Positions 425-10,240 of a stretch of DNA of 64,000 nt are shown here, piece after piece. The number at the start of each line of letters is the position of its first letter. Position 1 is the stretch's first letter. The notes below the pieces were generated by a model. The model did no database searches. It had not been told where the DNA came from and was given only the letters and a program-made list of their open reading frames with translations. A program made the position numbers and the translations under genes. Source of the DNA: Aplysia californica (lineage: Eukaryota); NCBI RefSeq assembly GCF_000002075.1, contig NW_004797676.1, positions 505,853 to 569,852 on the forward strand. The letters run 5' to 3'.

Positions 425-1310
425 GTCTATTCTCACCCCGGGTGAGAATAGCGCAGACGAGTCTTTTGGCTATTCTCACCCGGTGTGCGTTCACCATGTT
501 TTTAGCCTTGGCCAACCAGTGTAGCGTTCACCCTGAATCACAGGATTCTACACCGACACCGTGATAACAGAACTGTAAAATACTGTGCCGTGAACAAATG
601 TTCAATTACTACTGTTAGCCTAAATGCGTGCAATTTCGTCTGTGGGCAGTGGAGACGAGAGAGAGAGGAGTAGGCCTATGGCCCATGGCGAGAACTTCCG
701 GGCAAAATAAAATGACGACCCGCGTAGTTCGGCTCGATTCGAAAAGTCAAATAGCATTAGTAGCATCTTTGTAGATGACCAAATTAATTTACTTTTTTGT
801 GTTTTAATATCATTTTTTAACTTTGCTTTGGTCAATTTGATCGTCCACACCAATTCAGAAAGAGACAGAGAGAGAGAGGGGAGGAGTAGATCTTGCGAGA
901 ACTTCCAGGCAAAACAAAATGGCGACCCACCTAGTTTGGCGCGATTTGAAAAGTGAAATAGCCATAGCGTCTATACTGACGATCAAATTATAATCTTACT
1001 TTTGTGCTATAACGTCATTTTTTCTTAGCTTTTTATCAATTTGATCATCCACACCGATAGACAGTATTCCGAAATGAGGAAAAACATGTCTTGTTTCACA
1101 CCGGGTGAGAATAGCCAACGCTGGCAAGTCTCAACCAGGGTGAGAGGTCGATTGTCTTTTTATTCTCACCCCGGGTGAGGATAGCCACTTCCATACTAAA
1201 AATAGCACAGGCAAGCCTTATGGCTATTCTCACCCGGTGTGCATTCACCGTGATAGGCCACCAGTCTTGCGTTCACCGTGATCAAACATTCCAGCGCTCT
1301 TGTGTTGAAA
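425..1310. repeat. Palindrome-bounded repeat with two ~215-bp internal tandem units (partial second copy ~2915-3440)
   Basis: CTATTCTCACCC(C)GGGTGAGAATAG palindromes. The unit GGCGACC..GTAGTT.GGCTCGATTCGAAAAGTGAAATAGC occurs at ~715, ~920, ~3025 and ~3225. Confidence 0.7.
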
Positions 1311-1323
1311 GCGTGCTATTATC

Positions 1324-2905
1324 GGGAGGACTTCCGAAACGAGCGACCACTTGAGGGGTAGGGGAAGGGCTAGGGTTATGGAAGGACTTCTGTAACGACT
1401 GACCACTCCAACCTACGCAATAAAGAAGGGACTTTTGAGTTGACTATGTAAAAGACAGGACAGGGTTTAGTATTTGGTTGGACAATAAAGAAAGTAAAAC
1501 TGCTTTCGTATTTCCTTGTGTTCTCTTGCCTTCCACTGTCTGTCTACCTGGAATGTATATTATTATATTATTAGTTAGTTAATGTTAACATCTATCTGAA
1601 AAACATACATAATATGACATGATTGGAAAAATCCATATTTCGATGTGACCGTGATTCGAACCTGTGAGTGAGAGAAGCAAACATGATTAGTAATCCAAAA
1701 ACGTACCACTATGCCTATGCCACTAGGCTGTTGACACAAAAAGGTTTAAAAAATTCTTAAGAACCTACTCAAGTTTAAGTGGGAGTGTATCACCTTTAAA
1801 AATTACCAAAACGCAATTATTTTATTTCAGGATTTTGCTGAGGTTCCGTCGCAAAATTACGACAGCTGATGCGATTGGCTTTAAAAAAAATATTTTAAAA
1901 AGTACATTTCTGAGTCGAGTCTACGTAATTTGCATAAAAGGGGGGACCTTCATTGTTTGAGTTGCCACTGGACAAACGGGGATTTCTCCTTACCGGCCTA
2001 CCTTTATTTCGTTTTTTTAGTACGCCCGTGTCGCTGTAGGGGATGAAGAGAAAAATTAACCAATTTATTATAGCCATTTCATTTCACACATATTTTGAAC
2101 GAGAGAAAAAAAAAGAAGAAGAACTTAAAAAACTAATTCTGTGGCAACCAATCGCGACCTCAGTGCTTTCTTGTTCCACCTCCATTTTATAATTTTATCT
2201 ATTGCTATCCCTACCACTACCTTTACCTTTACCCCTAACCCTTACACTACCCCCTACCCCTACCCCTACCCCGACCCTCACCCTACACCTATACCTACCC
2301 CAACCCTAACCCTACCCCAAACCATACCCCTAATAAACCCTACCCCAAACCATACCCTTTATAAACCCTACCCCTAACCCTACCGTTAATCCTACCCCTA
2401 CCCCCTACCCTTGAACTTACCTCTACCCATAATTACCCTAAATCTACCCCTAACCCTACCCTGGATTAACCCTAACCCTAACCATAGCCCTACCGCTAAC
2501 CATACCCTTAACCCAAGCCTAACCCTAACTCTTAAATCGCAGTTCTACCCTGTTTCATAGTGGTCGCTCGTTACTGCTTTAATAATAATGTGTTTTATGG
2601 GAGGACTAGTCTAGATGAGAATTTGGTTACTAAACAAACCGACGAAAACCTGGCAAACCAGGGTTCCCAAACAGCGGAAGTAAATAAAATCTGCAGGGTT
2701 AACAATGGCCGCATCTAGACGAAAGTCTACTAATCCCCGACTCAGATCTTCAAAACTTTGAAATGGGCCTAAAAATATGTAAACTGCCGTAAGTTTGTCG
2801 TGATCAGGTGGTACAACAGTGGCTTTCGGTCTTCCATCATGATTTTGATGGCCATTGAGTATAATCTAAATTTTATAGTGGTCGCTCGTTACGGAAGTCC
2901 TCTCC
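1324..2905. mobile_element. TIR element carrying degenerate telomere-like repeats
   Basis: GAGGACTTCCGAAACGAGCGACCACT vs AGTGGTCGCTCGTTACGGAAGTCCTC (1 mismatch in 26); CCCTAA/CCCTAC array at ~2209-2530. Confidence 0.7.
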
Positions 2906-4590
2906 AATATTTTATCTATGGGCAGTGAGAGAGAAAGAGGGGGGGGGGGGGGGGGGGGAGGGGGGGGGGGGGGGGGGGGGGAGAAGGAGTAGATCTAGCG
3001 AGATCTTCCGGGCAAAACAAAGTGGCGACCCACGTAGTTTGGCTCGATTCGAAAAGTGAAATAGCCATGACATCTCTGTAAACGGCTAAATTAGTTTACT
3101 TTTGTGCTATAACATTATTTTTTTCTTTGTTTTTTGTCAATTTGATTGTCCACACCGATAGACAGTATTCAGAGAGAGAGAGAAGGGGTAGATCTGGCGA
3201 GAACCTATCGAGAAAAACAGAATGGCGACCCGCGTAGTTCGGCTCGATTCGAAAAGTGAAATAGCCATAGCATCTCTGTAAACGATCAAATTAGTTTACT
3301 TTTGTGCTGTAACATCATTTTTTTCTTTGTTTTTGTCAATTCGATCATCCACACCGATAGAAAGTATTAAGAAATGAGGAAAAAGCCGGTCTTGTTTCTC
3401 ACTGGGTGAGAATAGCCAACATTGGCAAGTCTCACCCTACTAATAGATGTCTAGTAGAATAGTACTGAACCTCAGATAAGGTAAACACTCTTCTGGACCC
3501 AAAGAGTTCACTTTAAGCGGACTCCACTGTACACACTAACTTTGCACCAGCATATTTTATTCCCACTTGTGTATTAATTATGCATACAGTCAGCGACATT
3601 TATGATTTTACTTTTGTCAGCAGCCACAACTACACCCCTGTGAGTAACATACTTTGCATAGAGACACAGAAATTTTGGAAAGGTCAAAAACAGCCTCAGG
3701 CATACACCACTCACCTCTGCAACGATCAATACCAAAAAATGTAAATTTTTATGGAATTTTTTTTCGCTGATGGCTTAATAAATCAACGAAGACATGGACA
3801 TGACAAGAAAGTAAAATGGTTCCATCATGAATAACACTAGACTTTCAGTGGAATTTCATTGTCCAAATAATATTTGACAGTAACACTTAGTAAGGCAAAA
3901 TGAAAATATCTATTTTACCAGTTAAGTTTGTCAGTTTCAAGAAAACTGGCAAAGTTTGGTGATTTTCAAAGCTTGAGACAAGAGTTCTTGAAACTGTAAA
4001 TTTACCATTTTTGTGACTTTAATTTTAATCGTTTTTCAATGTGCCTAAGCCACACCGCACCTTGTTTTTAAATGGACATAGATCTTAACTCTGGAAGCAC
4101 GCAGGCCCTATATTTTATGTCCACCCCAGTTTTTGTTTAGTAAATTGTGATCTAAAATATGGAATCTTAGCCGAATGTAGACCTTCAGAGTGAATCAGAG
4201 CTGGGTCTTAGGAGTGACTTTAGTGTAGTATAAATTCTGCTTTCTGAAAACAGCGGGGTTTTAGGCGAACCAGGATCGTAAGCGGTGGGCTCTTTTGTGG
4301 AGACTACTGTACTAAATTCCTGGATGTATTAAAGTCCCCCTATCCCTGCCTTTGTTGTGCTTTTTGTCTCTTGTTTTCTTTCCCTTATTTATTATAAATC
4401 GAGTAGTTCCCCTCTTTTAACTTTGTTGAATGATGGTTCTTTCCTCTCTCACCCAGTTCTTTACAATACATTTGATCTGTATCTTGACTAAGAGTATAAC
4501 CAGAGACCATATTTTGACGTTGATTCTGATCTCCTAGTTAGGTTTCTTTTTGCTAATATTTTCAAGCACATTATTCATTTTTATTCCCAG

Positions 4591-7500
4591 GTTGACTCGA
4601 TCCTTGAGCAACGAAAAAGGAAAGGGGTTTTAGAATATTTGGTGCGTTGGAAAGATGCTGACGCAGGAGAAGACACTTCATGGGAACCTGCAGACTCAAT
4701 AATTGCTGACTGTGCTCAAGCTGTCAAAAGCTTCTTGAAAGCGAAAAGTGCTAAGGTAGGTATGGTTACACAATACATGTTATCTATGCTGTCCCCATCC
4801 CATCCCCTTTTTTAAAAACAATGTTCATAACTTGGCTCTTTAGCTAAGCAGATTTTGTGCTGCACATTAATAATAAAATAATTTGATGGCATCTTTTGTG
4901 TATTTATTTTTACTAATATTCTAGTCTCACATCTGTCTTTTTCTTGACACTAATATGGTCACTAAGCTCTATGTTCTTTACTCTGCAAACTTTCTTCTAC
5001 GGTACAAACAACTAAAGCTGTTATTTAATTTCAGCTTTAAAAGTTTATAATTATAATCATCTCAGCTTGAAAGGAAAATCATGTGTGTGCATCACCTTAG
5101 GAAGTATCTGTAGTTTCTTGAGAAATTTGTCATCATGCGTTTTCACTTTTGCAATATTTTGTATTTTCTTATTTGAAGTTGTATGTTCTGAAAGAAATTC
5201 AAAATTTATTTTTAAAGGTGGGACTTAGCTTTTTTGCAAGTCTGTCAGGGGTTGTTTTGTCTCCAGTTGTCAATACAAAGTGCTAATATATCTATGTACG
5301 GTATCTTGTCTTTTCATTGATCAGAGGTCGTCGTCAAGATCAAGAAAGTCTTCTCGTTCAAGGTCAAGATCTTCATCCCGAAGTCGCAAGGCGACAACGA
5401 AAAAAGAAACAACGAAAACAGCTGTTAGGAGGTCCTCAAGGTCCCGATCAAAAGGCAGATTGTCCAAAACGTCCACAGAGGAAAAGAAAGACGTTGAAGA
5501 GGTCAAAGAGAAGGCCCCTGTAAAAGAGAAAAGTCCTGAAAAAGTAACCGTCGTTGCAAATAATTCTTCCTCCACTGTGGTTGCAAGTGTTTCTACTAGC
5601 AGCACTACTACTCAAAGTGCTATGGCAGAAAAGGTATGGAAATAGTCACTATGTGTTGTATACTGAAGATTTGTGAAAATGCTTTTAGAAGTATACTGAC
5701 ACATGTATGGTTTGTCAGTTTTGTTGCTTAAATTTTTTAGTTATAAATATTGTACGGTCTAAGAAAAAAAAGTTGTTTTTGTTTGTGTATTTATTTAAAG
5801 TTTTTTTAGTTGTTTTTTTTTTTTTCCCTAATGGTTTGTTTTTGTGTTTCTTCCAGAAACGTTCAGCGAGTCCGGAGCAGGGTCGAGTGCTGAGGTCATC
5901 TACAGTGGCAGCCAGAGAGAAGTTGGAGGTTCAACGTGTACACAACGAGCAGCGACCAGTACGGGAAGACGACAACCAACCCCGCAGTGCTGTTTGGAGG
6001 GTGGCAGACTATGCTGTCATTGTTCTGTTCATCATCTCTGTCATCGCTGCTATCTTCCTGTTTGTTGAGAAGTTTGTCGAGTAAGTTCTGAAAAACAACT
6101 TATTTATGACATTACTCATCATCTATACAGATGTTTCATAATGATGACTGTTTCAACTCCTCTGGCCAACCCATCAGTGCATTAGTATTGCACTTTACAT
6201 CATGTTTGAATCAGTTTTTGAGCTGTGTAAAGTGTACATACATTTTTCCTTTACTTCAGTATTTAATTAGTATTTAGCGGTGGTTAAGAAGATTTTATGT
6301 TACACTCTATACTGTAGTGTACCCCGCATGCGGGGTCACATGCTTTCGGAGTCTCGCGGAAGGATTGATGAAAAATAATTCCAAACTGATTACTTTATTC
6401 TAATAGAAAATGAACTGATTTTTTAATTGATATATTTTTCAAGCCAATATTTTACATATTTTGTGTAAAAAGTGATCTTGAAACATTTTTACTGTAATTT
6501 TAAAAGCTTTCTATTTAGACGCCAACGGTCAAATATATACCACAGGAAAGCCTGTTTAAAGCTGTACAGTTCTCCGCCAATGAAAAGACGGTATTTAATC
6601 ATTCCTCGTTATGCGAAGCATTTGAATGCACGCGTGTCAATTTTTCAGCCAGCCGACCATGCATTCCGACCACGAGGGGCTTCGCTTTCGTCGGCGATCC
6701 TCCAGCTCCTAATAATGGGACATAAAAACAACTTACACCATTGTAACGAGGAAAAGCTGAACTTTTACAAGGTGTACGGCATTTGGTGTTTTATAGCGAA
6801 AGAGAAAAGAAACAGCGATCAGAATTACCCTGATTTCACTGATGCCACCCTGTCGGAAGGCCGCGGGGCCGTGTTTACGCTACCTAAATAAAGTCGTGGG
6901 CTTAGAATTATTTTGCATCAATCTTTATGCGAAACTCGGAAAGCATGTGATCCCCCTCGCGGGGAGACATAATTATGTGGGGCCGACCGGGTTAACGCTC
7001 GGTGTTTTTGTCGAAATAACGACTAATCATCGTGTTTGGGGCAATAAAATACTGATTTGTAATGATCTTACAGTCTTGAAAAAAATTAGGCTCCATATCT
7101 ATGTATAGTGATTGTACTCTGTTAATGTAGAGATGTTTGGTGTACTTAATACACTTTTGTTGTCTGTCAAACATGAGGTTGCAGCCAGTTAGCAATTAAG
7201 CAATATTTGATCAAATTTAAAACAGCTGCCATTTTCTTAAAAATTTACTGAGAGGTAACAGAATGGTACCAAAATTCCCTAGAGACTTCGGCCTTTCATA
7301 TGGAACAAATAAATTTGGCATACTGCTGCTTTGAAAATTTAGTTTCTGGTACCTACTATTCTTATTCAAAGCACAATGGTACTGGTGAGGTTTTTTTCTG
7401 TGAACAAGGGAGGTTTACTTTTAGTTATGTAGAATACTTTGTTTGCTTGTAAATTGTCGTACATGAGTGTTCTTTCCATCTCAGACCTGGCCTTTTGGTT

Positions 7501-8222
7501 CTGCTGGTCCAGTAGTGAACATGTGATGAATAGAAAGTGAAAGATATTTTTTATTGGCATGCATGTCCCACATTTTCTGTATTCTTTTGAAGATTATTCT
7601 AAGTTAAGGGTGAGTTGGACTGTCAATAAATCTCATTATATCTGCACTAACCAAAATATACATTTTTTTTTATTAATGTAAAAAAATTGAGAAGAGTATT
7701 TGTGCTCCTGGTTGCCCCAGCTGTCTTGGTTTGGAATAGTATGGGCCAAAGGAGTTGAGATGTCAACGGTCATGCAGAGAGACAACATCCTTATTCTTTA
7801 AAGTTACCCATATTTCTGACATTAGCTGTTATGCTGTCAGTATGGATTTTATAATTTTCTCCCATTTCCATACTTCATACTGGCTGGGATTATGAATGGT
7901 AGAGTTTGTTCACACTTAATTTGTGTTTCCTTTTAGTGTAGGATTTTGGGGTAGTAAAAGGTAATGTGTGTCAAGCGGTGAAAGAAGATTTTGGCAACCT
8001 TTTTGTAAACAATATTTCTTTTTTGTCTGCAGTTTGGAGGACTTCAAGAAACAAGCATTCCCCAACATGAATGTCTTGAAGGCCCGTCTCATTGCAGCTC
8101 AGCAGAACCTGGTGGAGGTGGTGCAGACCCTTGTGGCCCGCGTCTCCCAGGTCTGGCTACACATCGTTGACTCGGACAGCGCTGGACATGCCCCACAGCA
8201 GTCAGTACCCACCAAGCAATAA
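4591..8222 (+). CDS. Chromodomain + RS-rich + single-pass transmembrane protein; 5'-partial, visible exons 4591-4755, 5325-5633, 5857-6080, 8033-8222 (295 aa visible)
   Basis: All junctions are AG/GT with matching phases (0,0,2). Exon 4591-4755 reads VDSILEQRKRKGVLEYLVRWKDADAGEDTSWEPADSI, matching the chromodomain motifs EYLV.W and T/SWEP. The next exon carries RSSSRSRKSSRSRSRSSSRSRK. The third carries the hydrophobic helix YAVIVLFIISVIAAIFLFV. The last ends ...SVPTKQ* at 8220-8222. The start-codon exon was not found and is probably upstream of the window. Confidence 0.85.
6318..6969. mobile_element. MITE in the last intron of the chromodomain gene
   Basis: ~38-bp imperfect TIR: CCCCGCATGCGGGGTCACATGCTTTCGGAGTCTCGC vs GCGAAACTCGGAAAGCATGTGATCCCCCTCGCGGGG. 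Confidence 0.75.
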
Positions 8223-9929
8223 TGTCTGTGTCTTGGTTTTTTAAAAATAATTTAGCAAATTGTATAGACAAGCTGTTCTTGTTGGATTATAATGCATGTT
8301 CTGCAGTGATGTCCAATTATGAATTTATAATGGAAATGAGTCTGAGATGGATGAAGGATCATCGTTTCTAGCACTCGAGAGAACAAAGGACAAGGCTCTG
8401 GTTGTCATGATCAGGTATGGTTTTGCTTACAGGCTTCCAGTTTAATGGTGAAGAGGTTGTGAGATGTTCTACTTGGGATCAAAGATGACCTGCCGAAGCA
8501 CATCAAAAGAGTTTTTTGTATTACCCTTTTTGTTCAGCAGAGACTCTTGAAAGGGCATCAGTACATCAATCAAAGAATTTCTACATGGTTCAGTGTATGA
8601 GAGGATAGTCCCTTGCTTTTGAGTAAGCCATGTAATTGAATTGTTGTCCTATCACATATGAAATACTATGACGCAGCCCGTGTAGCTGGCCAAAGCTCTG
8701 TCTAGGGTACCTTGCTAGACGGATTTGTTAGTTTGTGACCATTCATTCCAATTTGAAGATGACTTAATCCCAAGATGTTCACTTCAATGAGCAAAGAACC
8801 ACATGTTGAAAGATAAAGATGCTTTGTAACAAAGCCAGTACGTGTCCCAGACAGAATTCTTGTTTTCAGTCGGATTTGTGAAATGCTTTACTTTAGTATG
8901 GTGCCCTTTATTGGTTGTGCATTGAGGGCAAAGCTGATAAGTGTGACAGCATCACATGGTGCAAAGATTATGGAGTAATGCCATAGGTTCGTGAATGGTG
9001 AAATGCTTGTATATTTTTTGTATATTTTCTCTAATACTTTGAAATTAGTATGTTAAGAAACGCCTGTAAATGGTTTGGAGCAAGTTAATCCACCTACAGT
9101 ATTTTAGGAAAGAATGTTATGATGCCAACAAATCGCTTTATATGCATAGTAGTATATTTGAGATTTTTTATTGATCTATGCTCTTCAAAAGATGAATAGA
9201 TGAAATATTACTTTGAGGCAGCATTTTAAGAGAGGTATCATGGCTTTAGTTTTAGCATAACATTGTCTCATCAAAGGCAGAACATTTAGGGACATGTCCA
9301 AGAGGATTTCACCTGAAGAGCAGAGAAAAATTGAGAGCCTGACGTGCCGCCGATAGAGAACAAAGTAGTCTATATATGGCTGTCTGCAGACCAGGTTCGT
9401 CCCCGGTTTTGGAAATCCTTAGTTGGCATTCTGTTGCTCCAGTTCAGCAGACCCCTGAATGGAGGTGTATCACTTGGTCTGATTGTATCACTCTGTGTAT
9501 GGCAGTGGTGAAATGTTGATCATTCTATTTTGGAAGGTGTTGTCTTTAATGCATGCATGCAGAATAGCCTTTCATGTTTCTAGTATCATTTATGTGTTTT
9601 GTTATGCGTTGATGCATTTTGTTTCTCATTTTTATCTTCAAGTAGAGCTTCTGTTTGGACTATTTTGCAATTGCTGGCTGTACAACAAATGGGGTTCCCT
9701 GTTTCTGAGCCTGAATTAATTTGATATTTTGTTCAGATACTCACTGATGCACATCGAAACATTGAACAGAAGTCTTTGCCTATGCCCGCAGTGCTCAGAA
9801 GGGCTCATAAGTGTACATTAAGTGAACCTTAGCGAAGAGGGAAAGGAACACTACCATGTCATTAAAAATGTTTTAGTGATTACATACCTCGGTGGGGGGG
9901 GGGTATACGCCTACCCCTGGTCACAAAGC

Positions 9930-10240
9930 TGACACAGCTACTCAGCGTCTTCCGGAGTACACACCTGGTCATGTGTACAATGCCAATGAAACAGGGCTGT
10001 TTTATAAAGGAATCTCTGATCATGGTTATGTCTGCAAAGGTGTTGAGCTGAGTGGTGGAGAAAAGAGCAGAAATACATGATTGCTGTACTGATGTGCACT
10101 AACATGTGGGGACAGGTTAAGTTGTAATTTTTGTTCATTGGAAAAAACACTTGGCCACGTGGCTTTCCAAGTGACTGCTCCGGACTAGTTGTCATCTATT
10201 GCAACTCAGAAAATGCTTCGATGACATGAGACATTCTGAA
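9930..10240 (+). pseudogene. Tigger/TIGD-like DDE transposase relic
   Basis: YTPGHVYNANETGLFYK...SGGEKS, then IAVLMCTNMWGQVKL*FLFIGKNTWPRGF...VIYCNSENASMT*, with stops and a frameshift. Confidence 0.75.

What the first reader, a model, noticed from the sequence alone, without database searches (positions are those of the whole stretch)
4591..8222. Membrane-anchored chromodomain protein: candidate chromatin-nuclear envelope tether
Seen: a cleanly spliced product ordered chromodomain, RS-dipeptide tract, basic/S-T-rich linker (with KRSASP), one ~19-aa hydrophobic helix and a ~65-aa tail. The chromodomain exon is missing from the ORF track. Known: lamin B receptor uses Tudor + RS in front of a multipass sterol reductase; emerin and LAP2beta use LEM + linker + one TM helix; C. 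elegans CEC-4 anchors H3K9me through a chromodomain without a TM helix. Inference: this is a hybrid architecture I do not recognise as a described family, and may be an inner-nuclear-membrane chromatin tether regulated by RS phosphorylation.
Basis: partly seen in the sequence, partly recalled or inferred. Interest (0 to 1): 0.85.

Follow-up and report, generated by a model that had tools for sequence, protein, structure and literature searches.

The report
Membrane-anchored chromodomain protein of molluscs
This sea-hare gene really does encode a histone-reader-type chromodomain joined to an arginine/serine tract and one membrane-spanning helix, and it belongs to an unstudied family found across molluscs and in a ribbon worm that could pin chromatin directly to the nuclear membrane, though where it sits in the cell is untested.

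Summary
Four + strand exons (4591-4755, 5325-5633, 5857-6080, 8033-8222) are joined at GT..AG introns. Single RNA contigs from three runs span all four, so the chromodomain and the membrane helix lie on one transcript. The product equals RefSeq XP_012941238.1 of Aplysia californica (320 aa), auto-named "cec-1".

Exon A is a canonical chromodomain (Pfam E 2.6e-11; AF2 pLDDT 81-96; TM 0.89 to the MPP8 chromodomain). The first exon is not in the readable DNA. N blocks lie just upstream and were left unfilled. Its 25 residues carry the first cage aromatic and no signal peptide.

New here: this is a conserved family in gastropods, bivalves, a chiton and a nemertean. All members have an N-terminal chromodomain, a conserved RS block, a variable linker and a C-terminal helix. 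The chiton and nemertean proteins end 4-6 residues after the helix, so they are tail-anchored. Aplysia's 67-residue helical tail occurs only in gastropods.

Heterobranchs, including Aplysia, replaced the third cage aromatic (A48), so methyl-lysine reading is uncertain in Aplysia. No paper describes the architecture.

The inner-nuclear-membrane tether reading is plausible (about 0.45) but untested. Aplysia also keeps an LBR-like gene, so this protein adds to LBR rather than replacing it.

The parts
4591..4755 (+). Exon A: chromodomain (residues 26-80 of the 320-aa product), phase 0 at both ends. Cage residues W45 and A48 lie here.
   Evidence: (PF00385 E 2.6e-11). Acceptor and donor confirmed by RNA contigs.
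4756..5324 (+). Intron, GT..AG
   Evidence: table 5: joint in X7, X12 and X6 contigs and in 5 raw reads of X21.
5325..5633 (+). Exon B: RS tract followed by a K/E- and S/T-rich disordered linker (residues 81-183)
   Evidence: AF2 pLDDT is below 50 for most of this stretch.
5325..5459 (+). RS tract (residues 81-125). Its core block 81-103 is the best-conserved segment of the family.
   Evidence: R93, S98 and R101 are invariant, and R87, S90, S92, R95 and S96 are nearly invariant; identity 0.82 to heterobranchs and 0.66 to other molluscs.
5634..5856 (+). Intron, GT..AG
   Evidence: table 5.
5857..6080 (+). Exon C: KRSASP site, conserved pre-membrane segment (LEVQRVHNEQRP...), TM helix. Ends in a split codon (phase 2).
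5857..5874 (+). KRSASP, one of two S/T-P sites (S188-P189), a candidate proline-directed kinase site
   Evidence: Kinase use is inferred only.
6010..6066 (+). Transmembrane helix YAVIVLFIISVIAAIFLFV (residues 235-253), preceded by invariant D234 and followed by near-invariant E254
   Evidence: (KD 3.08), (helix 226-256, pLDDT 86-91).
6081..8032 (+). Intron, GT..AG. It contains a repeat-derived element with 78-nt inverted arms.
   Evidence: table 5.
8033..8222 (+). Exon D coding part: C-terminal tail predicted as one long helix (residues 259-308), stop TAA at 8220-8222
8223..8399 (+). 3' UTR. It continues past the laid stretch: the X12 contig runs 1127 nt further, to about 9526 if unspliced.
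   Evidence: table 8, record 1. The end point is inferred.

Best explanation
SHOWN. This is an expressed, single-copy Aplysia californica gene. Its product has, in order:
- a canonical chromodomain at the N-terminus;
- a strongly conserved Arg/Ser block;
- a disordered, variable linker;
- a conserved pre-membrane segment;
- one very hydrophobic helix;
- a 67-residue helical tail.
It has no signal peptide. It belongs to a family present in gastropods, bivalves, a chiton and a nemertean. The shortest members of that family are classical tail-anchored proteins.

INFERRED.
1. The helix inserts into the ER membrane, with the 234-residue (about 26 kDa) chromo+RS part facing the cytosol or nucleoplasm and the tail in the lumen.
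2. A domain of this size can diffuse through the pore membrane to the inner nuclear membrane. There it would be retained by the chromodomain binding a histone tail, most likely H3K9me or H3K27me in members with a full cage. The RS block would add self-association or DNA binding, as it does in LBR.
3. The protein would thereby tether chromatin to the nuclear envelope.
4. Phosphorylation of the RS block by SRPK-type kinases, and of the S/T-P sites by CDK-type kinases, would release it at mitosis.
5. In heterobranchs such as Aplysia the third cage aromatic became Ala/Asp/Ser/Glu and the loop grew by 1-4 acidic residues. Ligand preference has probably shifted there.
For: Gene model:
- In-frame GT..AG junctions carried by single contigs across all four exons in three runs.
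- The product is identical to P0154 / XP_012941238.1.
- Single copy in the genome.

Chromodomain:
- Pfam 43.7 bits and PDB sequence matches to HP1, CDYL, CBX and MPP8.
- AF2 gives beta 26-35, 38-45, 54-58 and helix 67-81 at pLDDT 81-96.
- Foldseek TM 0.80-0.89 and rmsd 1.2-1.6 A to H3K9me3- and H3K27me3-bound chromodomains.

Family and topology:
- 31 tabulated proteins from Mollusca and Lineus all carry chromo, an RS block, an Asp before the helix (S/A-D in all but Dreissena), and a helix of KD 2.1-3.1. Glu follows the helix in all but Dreissena, P0180 and Lineus. The C-terminal flank is net neutral or acidic in all but Patella and Lineus.
- The chiton and Lineus proteins end 4-6 residues after the helix.
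- There is no hydrophobic N-terminus.

Selection:
- Identity to heterobranchs / other molluscs is 0.82/0.66 for the RS block and 0.60/0.46 for the chromodomain, against 0.22/0.15 for the linker.

Analogy:
- LBR combines a histone reader (Tudor, H4K20me2) with an RS domain. That domain multimerises, is phosphorylated by SRPK1 and CDK1, and controls envelope versus ER localisation (PMC5617974).
- CEC-4 shows that a chromodomain at the inner nuclear membrane suffices to anchor H3K9me chromatin (PMC4783997).
Against: - No localisation, binding or phenotype data exist for any member.
- In Aplysia the cage is F24-W45-A48, not three aromatics. Biomphalaria and Bulinus also lack the first aromatic, and Lineus has Cys at the third position. 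Cage mutations abolish binding in CEC-4 (PMC7111258).
- Aplysia's helix lies 67 residues from the C-terminus, so it is not a strict tail anchor.
- Aplysia keeps an LBR-like gene with an RS exon, so there is no vacant niche that demands this protein.
- The best PDB sequence match is cpSRP43, whose chromodomains bind non-histone partners.
Confidence: 0.5

Rival explanations
1. It is an ER or other endomembrane adaptor. The protein stays in the general ER (or another organelle membrane), and its chromodomain binds a non-histone ligand: a methylated or basic motif in a cytosolic or membrane protein. It would then act as a protein-protein module with no role in chromatin positioning.
For: - The third cage aromatic is lost in all heterobranchs, and more of the cage is lost in Biomphalaria, Bulinus and Lineus, yet the domain stays conserved.
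- The top PDB sequence match is cpSRP43, whose chromodomains bind partner proteins.
- Structural neighbours include MPP8-DNMT3A K47me2 and CBX7-SETDB1 K1170me3 complexes, so non-histone ligands are common.
- The helix and its flanks are more conserved than simple anchoring requires.
Against: - Most lineages (bivalves, chiton, caeno-, veti- and patellogastropods) keep the full F/Y-W-F/Y cage typical of histone readers.
- The RS block and basic patches (QRKRKG) are typical of nuclear proteins.
- The small nucleoplasmic domain and ER-type anchor match known inner-nuclear-membrane tail-anchored proteins (established knowledge: emerin, LAP2beta).
Confidence: 0.25
2. It is a membrane-tethered RS-domain regulator. 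The conserved RS block is the working part and the chromodomain is accessory. The protein would dock SRPK/CLK kinases, transportin-SR or SR splicing factors at the ER or nuclear envelope, and so buffer or localise RS-dependent processes.
For: - The RS block is the most conserved segment of the family: 0.82/0.66 identity, three invariant and five nearly invariant R/S positions.
- LBR's RS domain is a bona fide SRPK1 substrate and docking site (PMC5617974).
Against: - The chromodomain is also under clear constraint and always present at the extreme N-terminus.
- RS tracts alone do not need a histone-reader fold.
- No RRM or other RNA-binding domain is present.
Confidence: 0.1
3. It is a latent chromatin factor released by intramembrane proteolysis. 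The type II or tail-anchored helix would be cut, for example by an SPP/SPPL-type protease, freeing a soluble chromo+RS protein that enters the nucleus on a signal.
For: - The orientation (N-terminus in the cytosol) is the one such proteases accept (established knowledge).
- Many members have a conserved Pro at the start of the helix (S-D-Y-P in bivalves).
- The flanking charged residues are conserved: invariant D234 and near-invariant E254.
Against: - Nothing in the sequence marks a cleavage site.
- Heterobranchs, including Aplysia, have Ala instead of that Pro.
- The long conserved lumenal helix in gastropods is not needed for such a mechanism.
Confidence: 0.08
4. It is a gene-model artefact: the chromodomain exon and the TM exon belong to different genes or to a chimeric assembly.
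For: - The first exon cannot be found in the readable genome.
- The raw-read run X21 covers only exon A and the start of exon B (table 2).
Against: - Three independent RNA assemblies each carry one contig through all four exons with no mismatches (table 8).
- The same architecture recurs in about 30 species.
Confidence: 0.02

Closest known systems
Lamin B receptor (LBR)
   Same: Both have a histone-reader domain at the N-terminus, followed at once by an RS tract and then membrane anchorage. Both carry S/T-P sites near the RS tract. In LBR the RS tract multimerises, is phosphorylated by SRPK1 and CDK1, and governs envelope versus ER distribution (PMC5617974).
   Different: The anchor is one helix, not an eight-span sterol reductase. 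There is no second globular (HP1-binding) domain. Aplysia has a separate LBR-like gene with its own RS exon.
C. elegans CEC-4
   Same: Both are chromodomain proteins proposed or shown to sit at the inner nuclear membrane. CEC-4 binds H3K9me1/2/3 directly and anchors heterochromatin without HP1 (PMC4783997).
   Different: CEC-4's chromodomain is internal. Its envelope targeting depends on a disordered C-terminal domain, and no TM helix or RS block is reported for it (PMC7111258). Orthology was not tested here. RefSeq's 'cec-1' and 'cec-3-like' names for family members are automatic.
Tail-anchored inner-nuclear-membrane proteins emerin and LAP2beta
   Same: Both have a small nucleoplasmic chromatin-binding domain, a disordered linker and a single C-terminal helix with few or no lumenal residues. 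The chiton and nemertean members end 4-6 residues after the helix.
   Different: No LEM domain was detected, so chromatin contact would be direct through a histone reader rather than through BAF. Gastropod members have a 56-77 residue lumenal extension.
HP1 / CBX / CDY / MPP8 chromodomain proteins
   Same: The chromodomain has the same fold at TM 0.8-0.89 and 33-41% identity. Most family members keep the full aromatic cage.
   Different: There is no chromoshadow, CBX7_C, enoyl-CoA hydratase or ankyrin domain. The protein is membrane-anchored. It has a family-specific QRKRKG signature in the first beta-hairpin. In heterobranchs the third cage residue is small or acidic.
cpSRP43 chromodomains
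   Same: This is the highest-scoring PDB sequence match, with a shared EYLVRWKD motif and a non-aromatic third cage position.
   Different: It is a plant chloroplast protein with ankyrin repeats and three chromodomains, with no RS tract or TM helix. The similarity is confined to the domain and is probably convergent.

Membership tests
Chromo domain (Pfam PF00385) | Profile match above the curated cut-off | tested here: met
   Exon A alone scores 43.7 bits against a cut-off of 25.1, E 2.6e-11, profile positions 3-52 of 53.
Chromo domain (Pfam PF00385) | Three-stranded antiparallel sheet packed against a C-terminal helix | tested here: met
   The AF2 model has beta 26-35, 38-45, 54-58 and helix 67-81 at pLDDT 81-96. 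Foldseek gives TM 0.89 and rmsd 1.2 A to the MPP8 chromodomain.
Methyl-lysine-reading chromodomains (HP1/Pc type) | Three-residue aromatic cage (HP1alpha Y20, W41, F44) | tested here: not met
   Aplysia has F24, W45 and A48. A48 aligns with F44 of CBX5. Bivalves, the chiton and non-heterobranch gastropods have the full F/Y-W-F/Y cage, apart from Dreissena and P0180, which have Met at the first position.
HP1 | C-terminal chromoshadow domain | tested here: not met
   No Chromo_shadow match outside the chromodomain itself (E 0.15 on the same residues).
CDY / CDYL (a name given to several members by RefSeq) | Enoyl-CoA hydratase domain after the chromodomain | tested here: not met
   No ECH match on any exon. 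Family members carry PF00385 only.
Lamin B receptor | N-terminal Tudor domain (PF09465) | tested here: not met
   The N-terminal domain is a chromodomain, and no LBR_tudor match appears on any exon.
Lamin B receptor | RS tract next to the reader domain | tested here: met
   Residues 81-125 hold the RS run, and the core block 81-103 is conserved family-wide.
Lamin B receptor | Multi-pass ERG4/ERG24 sterol reductase body | tested here: not met
   There is a single helix and no PF01222 match. The genome's PF01222 genes lie elsewhere, on C965 and C1027.
LEM-domain tail-anchored proteins (emerin, LAP2beta) | LEM domain | tested here: not met
   No LEM match at E up to 10 on any exon.
Tail-anchored membrane proteins | Single helix within about 30-40 residues of the C-terminus, and no signal peptide | tested here: not met
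   In Aplysia 67 residues follow the helix and there is no signal peptide. The feature is met in the chiton (4 residues), Lineus (6) and bivalves (29-40). Aplysia is therefore a derived type II single-pass form.
CEC-4 | Orthology of the chromodomain, and envelope targeting by a disordered C-terminal domain | not tested
The literature reports no TM helix for CEC-4.
Inner-nuclear-membrane chromatin tether (functional class) | Nuclear-rim localisation and chromatin binding | not testable with these tools
   This needs tagged-protein imaging and binding assays.

The most novel reading that the evidence does not exclude
Molluscs and nemerteans possess a dedicated, membrane-integral histone-mark reader: a tail-anchored chromodomain-RS protein. 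It would staple methylated chromatin directly to the inner nuclear membrane, with no lamin, HP1 or BAF as intermediary. This is the kind of direct anchor searched for in mammals since CEC-4 was described. Heterobranch gastropods, Aplysia among them, later remodelled the cage (third aromatic to Ala, Asp, Ser or Glu, with a longer acidic loop) and added a long lumenal helix. That would retune which mark is read and would couple the tether to the perinuclear space.
Probability: 0.35. Interest if true: 0.8.

Novelty: new variant of a known kind. Interest (0 to 1): 0.62.

Why it matters
How heterochromatin is held at the nuclear periphery is only partly solved. LBR reads H4K20me2 through a Tudor domain. 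CEC-4 reads H3K9me but has no obvious homologue outside nematodes. Reviews state that direct mark-reading anchors remain to be found (PMC4783997).

A conserved protein that puts a canonical H3K9/K27-type reader, an LBR-like RS switch and a tail anchor in one small polypeptide is a minimal tether that can be tested directly.

The family also offers a natural experiment. Full-cage members (bivalves, chiton) and reduced-cage members (Aplysia, Biomphalaria) can be compared. So can members with lumenal tails of 4 to 77 residues.

It also shows that the RefSeq names for these proteins (CDY-like, CBX-like, cec-1) are misleading.

Tried and rejected
- **First exon.** The 27- and 20-base patterns taken from the RNA contig's loose end found nothing in the window, the fetched upstream loci or the whole genome. 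A scan of 20 kb upstream for an ATG...aromatic|GT exon found only simple-repeat ORFs. The upstream locus has N blocks at L003 27-243, 4923-7248 and 8311-10000, the last abutting the window.
- **Joined model.** The joined spliced model was never typed or sent. Exons were searched one by one by reference. The full-length work used P0154, a database protein returned by a tool.
- **ESM Atlas.** The search with exon C gave only unrelated small bacterial and archaeal membrane proteins scoring below 0.9. The search with the whole protein gave no feature hit and only chromodomain families at TM below 0.35.
- **First AF2 run.** With 18 sequences the chromodomain did not fold (pLDDT about 45-54). A 63-sequence alignment fixed this.
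- **Complex prediction.** No result exists, so it is evidence neither way.
- **LBR_tudor (PF09465).** No match in the genome. The control genomes are prokaryotes and the domain may be split by introns, so this does not show absence. A regex scan upstream of the LBR-like gene also found no Tudor-like exon.
- **Beyond Mollusca and Nemertea.** The two profile searches returned only ordinary chromodomain proteins of fish and oomycetes. These searches are word-seeded and capped at 8000 candidates. Absence from annelids, brachiopods and cephalopods is therefore not shown.
- **P0143.** This triple-chromodomain protein with a hydrophobic C-terminus has a different architecture and was set aside.
- **Raw reads.** X21 covers only exon A and the start of exon B. 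I treat this as low or uneven coverage, not as an isoform.
Full report
**1. Observation**

- Exon A, 4591-4755, follows a polypyrimidine tract and AG, and ends before GTAGGT. It encodes VDSILEQRKRKGVLEYLVRWKDADAGEDTSWEP...
- Exon B, 5325-5633, encodes RSSSRSRKSSRSRSRSSSRSRK... and then a K/E- and S/T-rich stretch.
- Exon C, 5857-6080, encodes KRSASP..., a charged segment and YAVIVLFIISVIAAIFLFV. It ends in a split codon before GTAAGT.
- Exon D, 8033-8222, completes that codon (Asp) and encodes 62 more residues and TAA.

The phases agree.

**2. Are the exons really joined?**

Yes. Reads and contigs of four runs were laid on 2400-8399.
- The joints 4755|5325, 5633|5857 and 6080|8033 are all GT..AG.
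- Each is carried by one contig that crosses all four exons without a mismatch: X7 record 12, X12 record 1 and X6 record 6. These come from three studies under two organism labels.
- Five raw polyA reads of X21 cross the first joint.
- The X12 contig continues 1127 nt past 8399, which gives a long 3' UTR.
- The raw-read run covers only exon A and the start of exon B. I do not read an isoform into that.

**3. The missing 5' exon**

- The X7 contig has 52 more letters before 4589. The 30 shown translate in frame to ...NFSDDEKLFE (table 7).
- That sequence is absent from the window, from 20 kb upstream and from the rest of the genome as served.
- The upstream locus contains N blocks, one abutting the window start.
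- The database protein P0154 (below) starts MGTNSDFPTFDLKMANFSDDEKLFE. Orthologues start at the second Met (MA[NS]FSDDEK...).
- This N-terminus has no hydrophobic stretch: the highest 9-residue Kyte-Doolittle mean is 0.38.
- It also supplies the first cage aromatic (F24).

**4. Identity of the gene**

- Searching exon A against 1.84 billion representatives gave mostly multi-chromodomain proteins.
- A few single-domain hits of 239-341 aa had 55-75% identity: P0041, P0045, P0097 and P0129. All have an N-terminal chromodomain, an RS tract and a hydrophobic helix near the C-terminus.
- A search seeded with P0041 returned P0154, [quoted passage not shown], XP_012941238.1. It sits on a contig of 723,572 bases, the length of the window's contig.
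- Apart from the 25 N-terminal residues, its sequence equals the four exons joined. So the genome is Aplysia californica, and the model already exists in RefSeq under an automatic name.
- I never typed or submitted the joined model. Exons were searched singly by reference, and the full-length steps used P0154.
- The gene is single-copy.

**5. The chromodomain**

- Exon A alone scores 43.7 bits on PF00385, against a cut-off of 25.1. It matches PDB chromodomains of cpSRP43, HP1/CBX1/3/5, CDYL, CBX2/4/6/7/8 and MPP8.
- With a 63-sequence alignment, AF2 folds residues 21-80 at pLDDT 81-96 into three strands and a helix.
- Foldseek places the model on MPP8, CDY1, CBX7, CBX4 and HP1 chromodomains, most of them solved with H3K9me3 or H3K27me3 peptides, at TM 0.8-0.89 and rmsd 1.2-1.6 A.
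- Of the aromatic cage, F24 and W45 are present, but the third position is Ala48. It aligns with F44 of CBX5.
- It also aligns with the Gly of the engineered CBX1 "bump-hole" mutant 6d08. In that mutant a small residue at this site enlarged the pocket without destroying peptide binding.
- Aplysia therefore fails the strict three-aromatic test. Binding may be weaker or its specificity may be retuned.

**6. The family**

- Two profile searches and sequence inspection give about 31 proteins.
- They come from heterobranch, caeno-, veti- and patellogastropods, from pteriomorph, palaeoheterodont, heterodont and protobranch bivalves, from the chiton Liolophura, and from the nemertean Lineus.
- Every one has the same order of parts:
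  - an N-terminal chromodomain with a family signature (I/L)L.QRKRKG..EYLVRW;
  - an RS block;
  - a variable linker;
  - an Asp before the helix (S/A-D in all but Dreissena);
  - a helix of Kyte-Doolittle mean 2.1-3.1;
  - a Glu straight after the helix in all but Dreissena, P0180 and Lineus.
- Conservation is modular. Identity to heterobranchs / other molluscs is 0.82/0.66 for the RS block, 0.60/0.46 for the chromodomain, 0.22/0.15 for the linker and 0.75/0.26 for the helix.
- The tail after the helix varies by lineage:

| Lineage | Residues after the helix |
|---|---|
| Chiton | 4 |
| Lineus | 6 |
| Bivalves | 29-40 |
| Gastropods | 56-77 |

- The short-tailed members are therefore tail-anchored, and the long helical tail of Aplysia occurs only in gastropods. 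AF2 models it as helix 259-308 at pLDDT 82-91.
- The full F/Y-W-F/Y cage is kept outside Heterobranchia, apart from Dreissena and P0180, which have Met at the first position. All heterobranchs have A, D, S or E at the third position and a loop longer by 1-4 residues. Biomphalaria and Bulinus also lack the first aromatic. Lineus has Cys at the third position, and its isoform X3 restores the first Phe.
- No member was found outside Mollusca and Nemertea. The searches are word-seeded and capped, so this is a lower bound.

**7. How it most likely works**

Shown:
- the architecture and its conservation;
- the lack of a signal peptide;
- an ER-type anchor (high hydrophobicity, and a neutral or acidic C-terminal flank in all but Patella and Lineus).

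Inferred:
- The protein inserts into the ER with the N-terminus in the cytosol, by the post-translational route in tail-anchored members.
- The 26-kDa extralumenal domain passes the pore membrane and is retained at the inner nuclear membrane by chromatin binding.
- The RS block adds self-association and a phosphorylation switch, as in LBR. LBR's Tudor reads H4K20me2, its RS tract multimerises, and SRPK1 and CDK1 phosphorylation disperses it to the ER (PMC5617974).
- CEC-4 shows that a chromodomain at the inner nuclear membrane can anchor H3K9me chromatin by itself (PMC4783997). CEC-4 relies on a disordered C-terminal domain for targeting, and no TM helix is reported for it (PMC7111258).

I put the tether reading at about 0.45-0.5. 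The structural statements stand above 0.9.

**8. Rivals**

- An ER or organelle adaptor whose chromodomain binds a non-histone ligand (0.25). The eroded cage in heterobranchs and the cpSRP43-like motif favour it.
- A membrane-tethered RS-domain regulator (0.1).
- A latent factor released by intramembrane proteolysis (0.08).
- An artefact (0.02), refuted.

**9. Context**

- Aplysia has an LBR-like gene on contig C965. It has multi-exon ERG4/ERG24 matches preceded by an exon encoding ...SKSASRSRSRSSGRKTK... and a juxtamembrane exon.
- The chromodomain protein therefore adds to LBR and does not replace it.
- LBR_tudor was not detected, which is weak evidence.

**10. Known or new?**

- Six full-text searches found no paper describing a chromodomain with a transmembrane or tail anchor, and none on this Aplysia protein.
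- Pfam, PDB and the Atlas recognise only the chromodomain.
- The RefSeq names (cec-1, cec-3-like, CDY-like, CBX1/2/5-like, TSPY-like) are automatic. The membership tests contradict them: there is no chromoshadow, ECH or CBX7_C domain.
- I class it as a new variant of a known kind. It is a nuclear-envelope chromatin-tether architecture built from known modules in an undescribed combination, and its function is unproven.

**11. Steps that gave no result**

Noticed in passing
window 6322-6399 and 6887-6964 (intron 3): 78-nt inverted arms, 79% complementary and 487 nt apart, flank a 139-aa mechanical ORF (6472-6891). The region has very high, mismatched RNA-contig depth and 'opposite strands' joints. 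It looks like a MITE-like or foldback repeat with many copies in the genome.
   Followed up: partly
window 699-1084 and 3009-3384: Four copies of a roughly 126-nt unit plus an adjacent 89-nt unit, in two pairs 2.1 kb apart. RNA depth is high on both strands with consistent base differences, so this is an abundant, transcribed dispersed repeat and not part of the gene.
   Followed up: partly
window 2210-2530: About 300 nt of degenerate CCCTAA/CCCTAC-type units, which resemble an interstitial telomere-like repeat. It is followed at 2941-2990 by a G run of about 50 nt.
   Followed up: no
L003 (G000:C406:495853-505852) 27-243, 4923-7248, 8311-10000; window 51275-51802 and 63126-63289: N blocks. 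The one ending at the window start is the likely home of the gene's first exon.
   Followed up: no
G000:C965, about 129.5-140.8 kb (L009 5946 onward; L005-L007): An LBR-like gene. An RS-rich exon (…SKSASRSRSRSSGRKTK…) and a juxtamembrane exon lie upstream of multi-exon ERG4/ERG24 matches. No Tudor exon was recognised.
   Followed up: partly
G000:C1027:60676-61797 (L004 1498-3036, minus strand): An intronless 512-aa ERG4/ERG24 ORF (E 1.6e-66). It looks like a 7-dehydrocholesterol-reductase-type sterol reductase. An uninterrupted gene is unusual in this intron-rich genome.
   Followed up: no
window 4600-5400, run X21: The raw polyA single-end reads cover exon A and the first 75 nt or so of exon B, but not exons C or D or the 3' UTR. 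All lie on the + strand. This may be a 5'-biased library or simply low depth.
   Followed up: no
P0143: A 275-aa protein with three chromodomains and a hydrophobic C-terminal segment, source unknown. It has a different architecture, but it is another possible membrane-anchored chromodomain protein.
   Followed up: no
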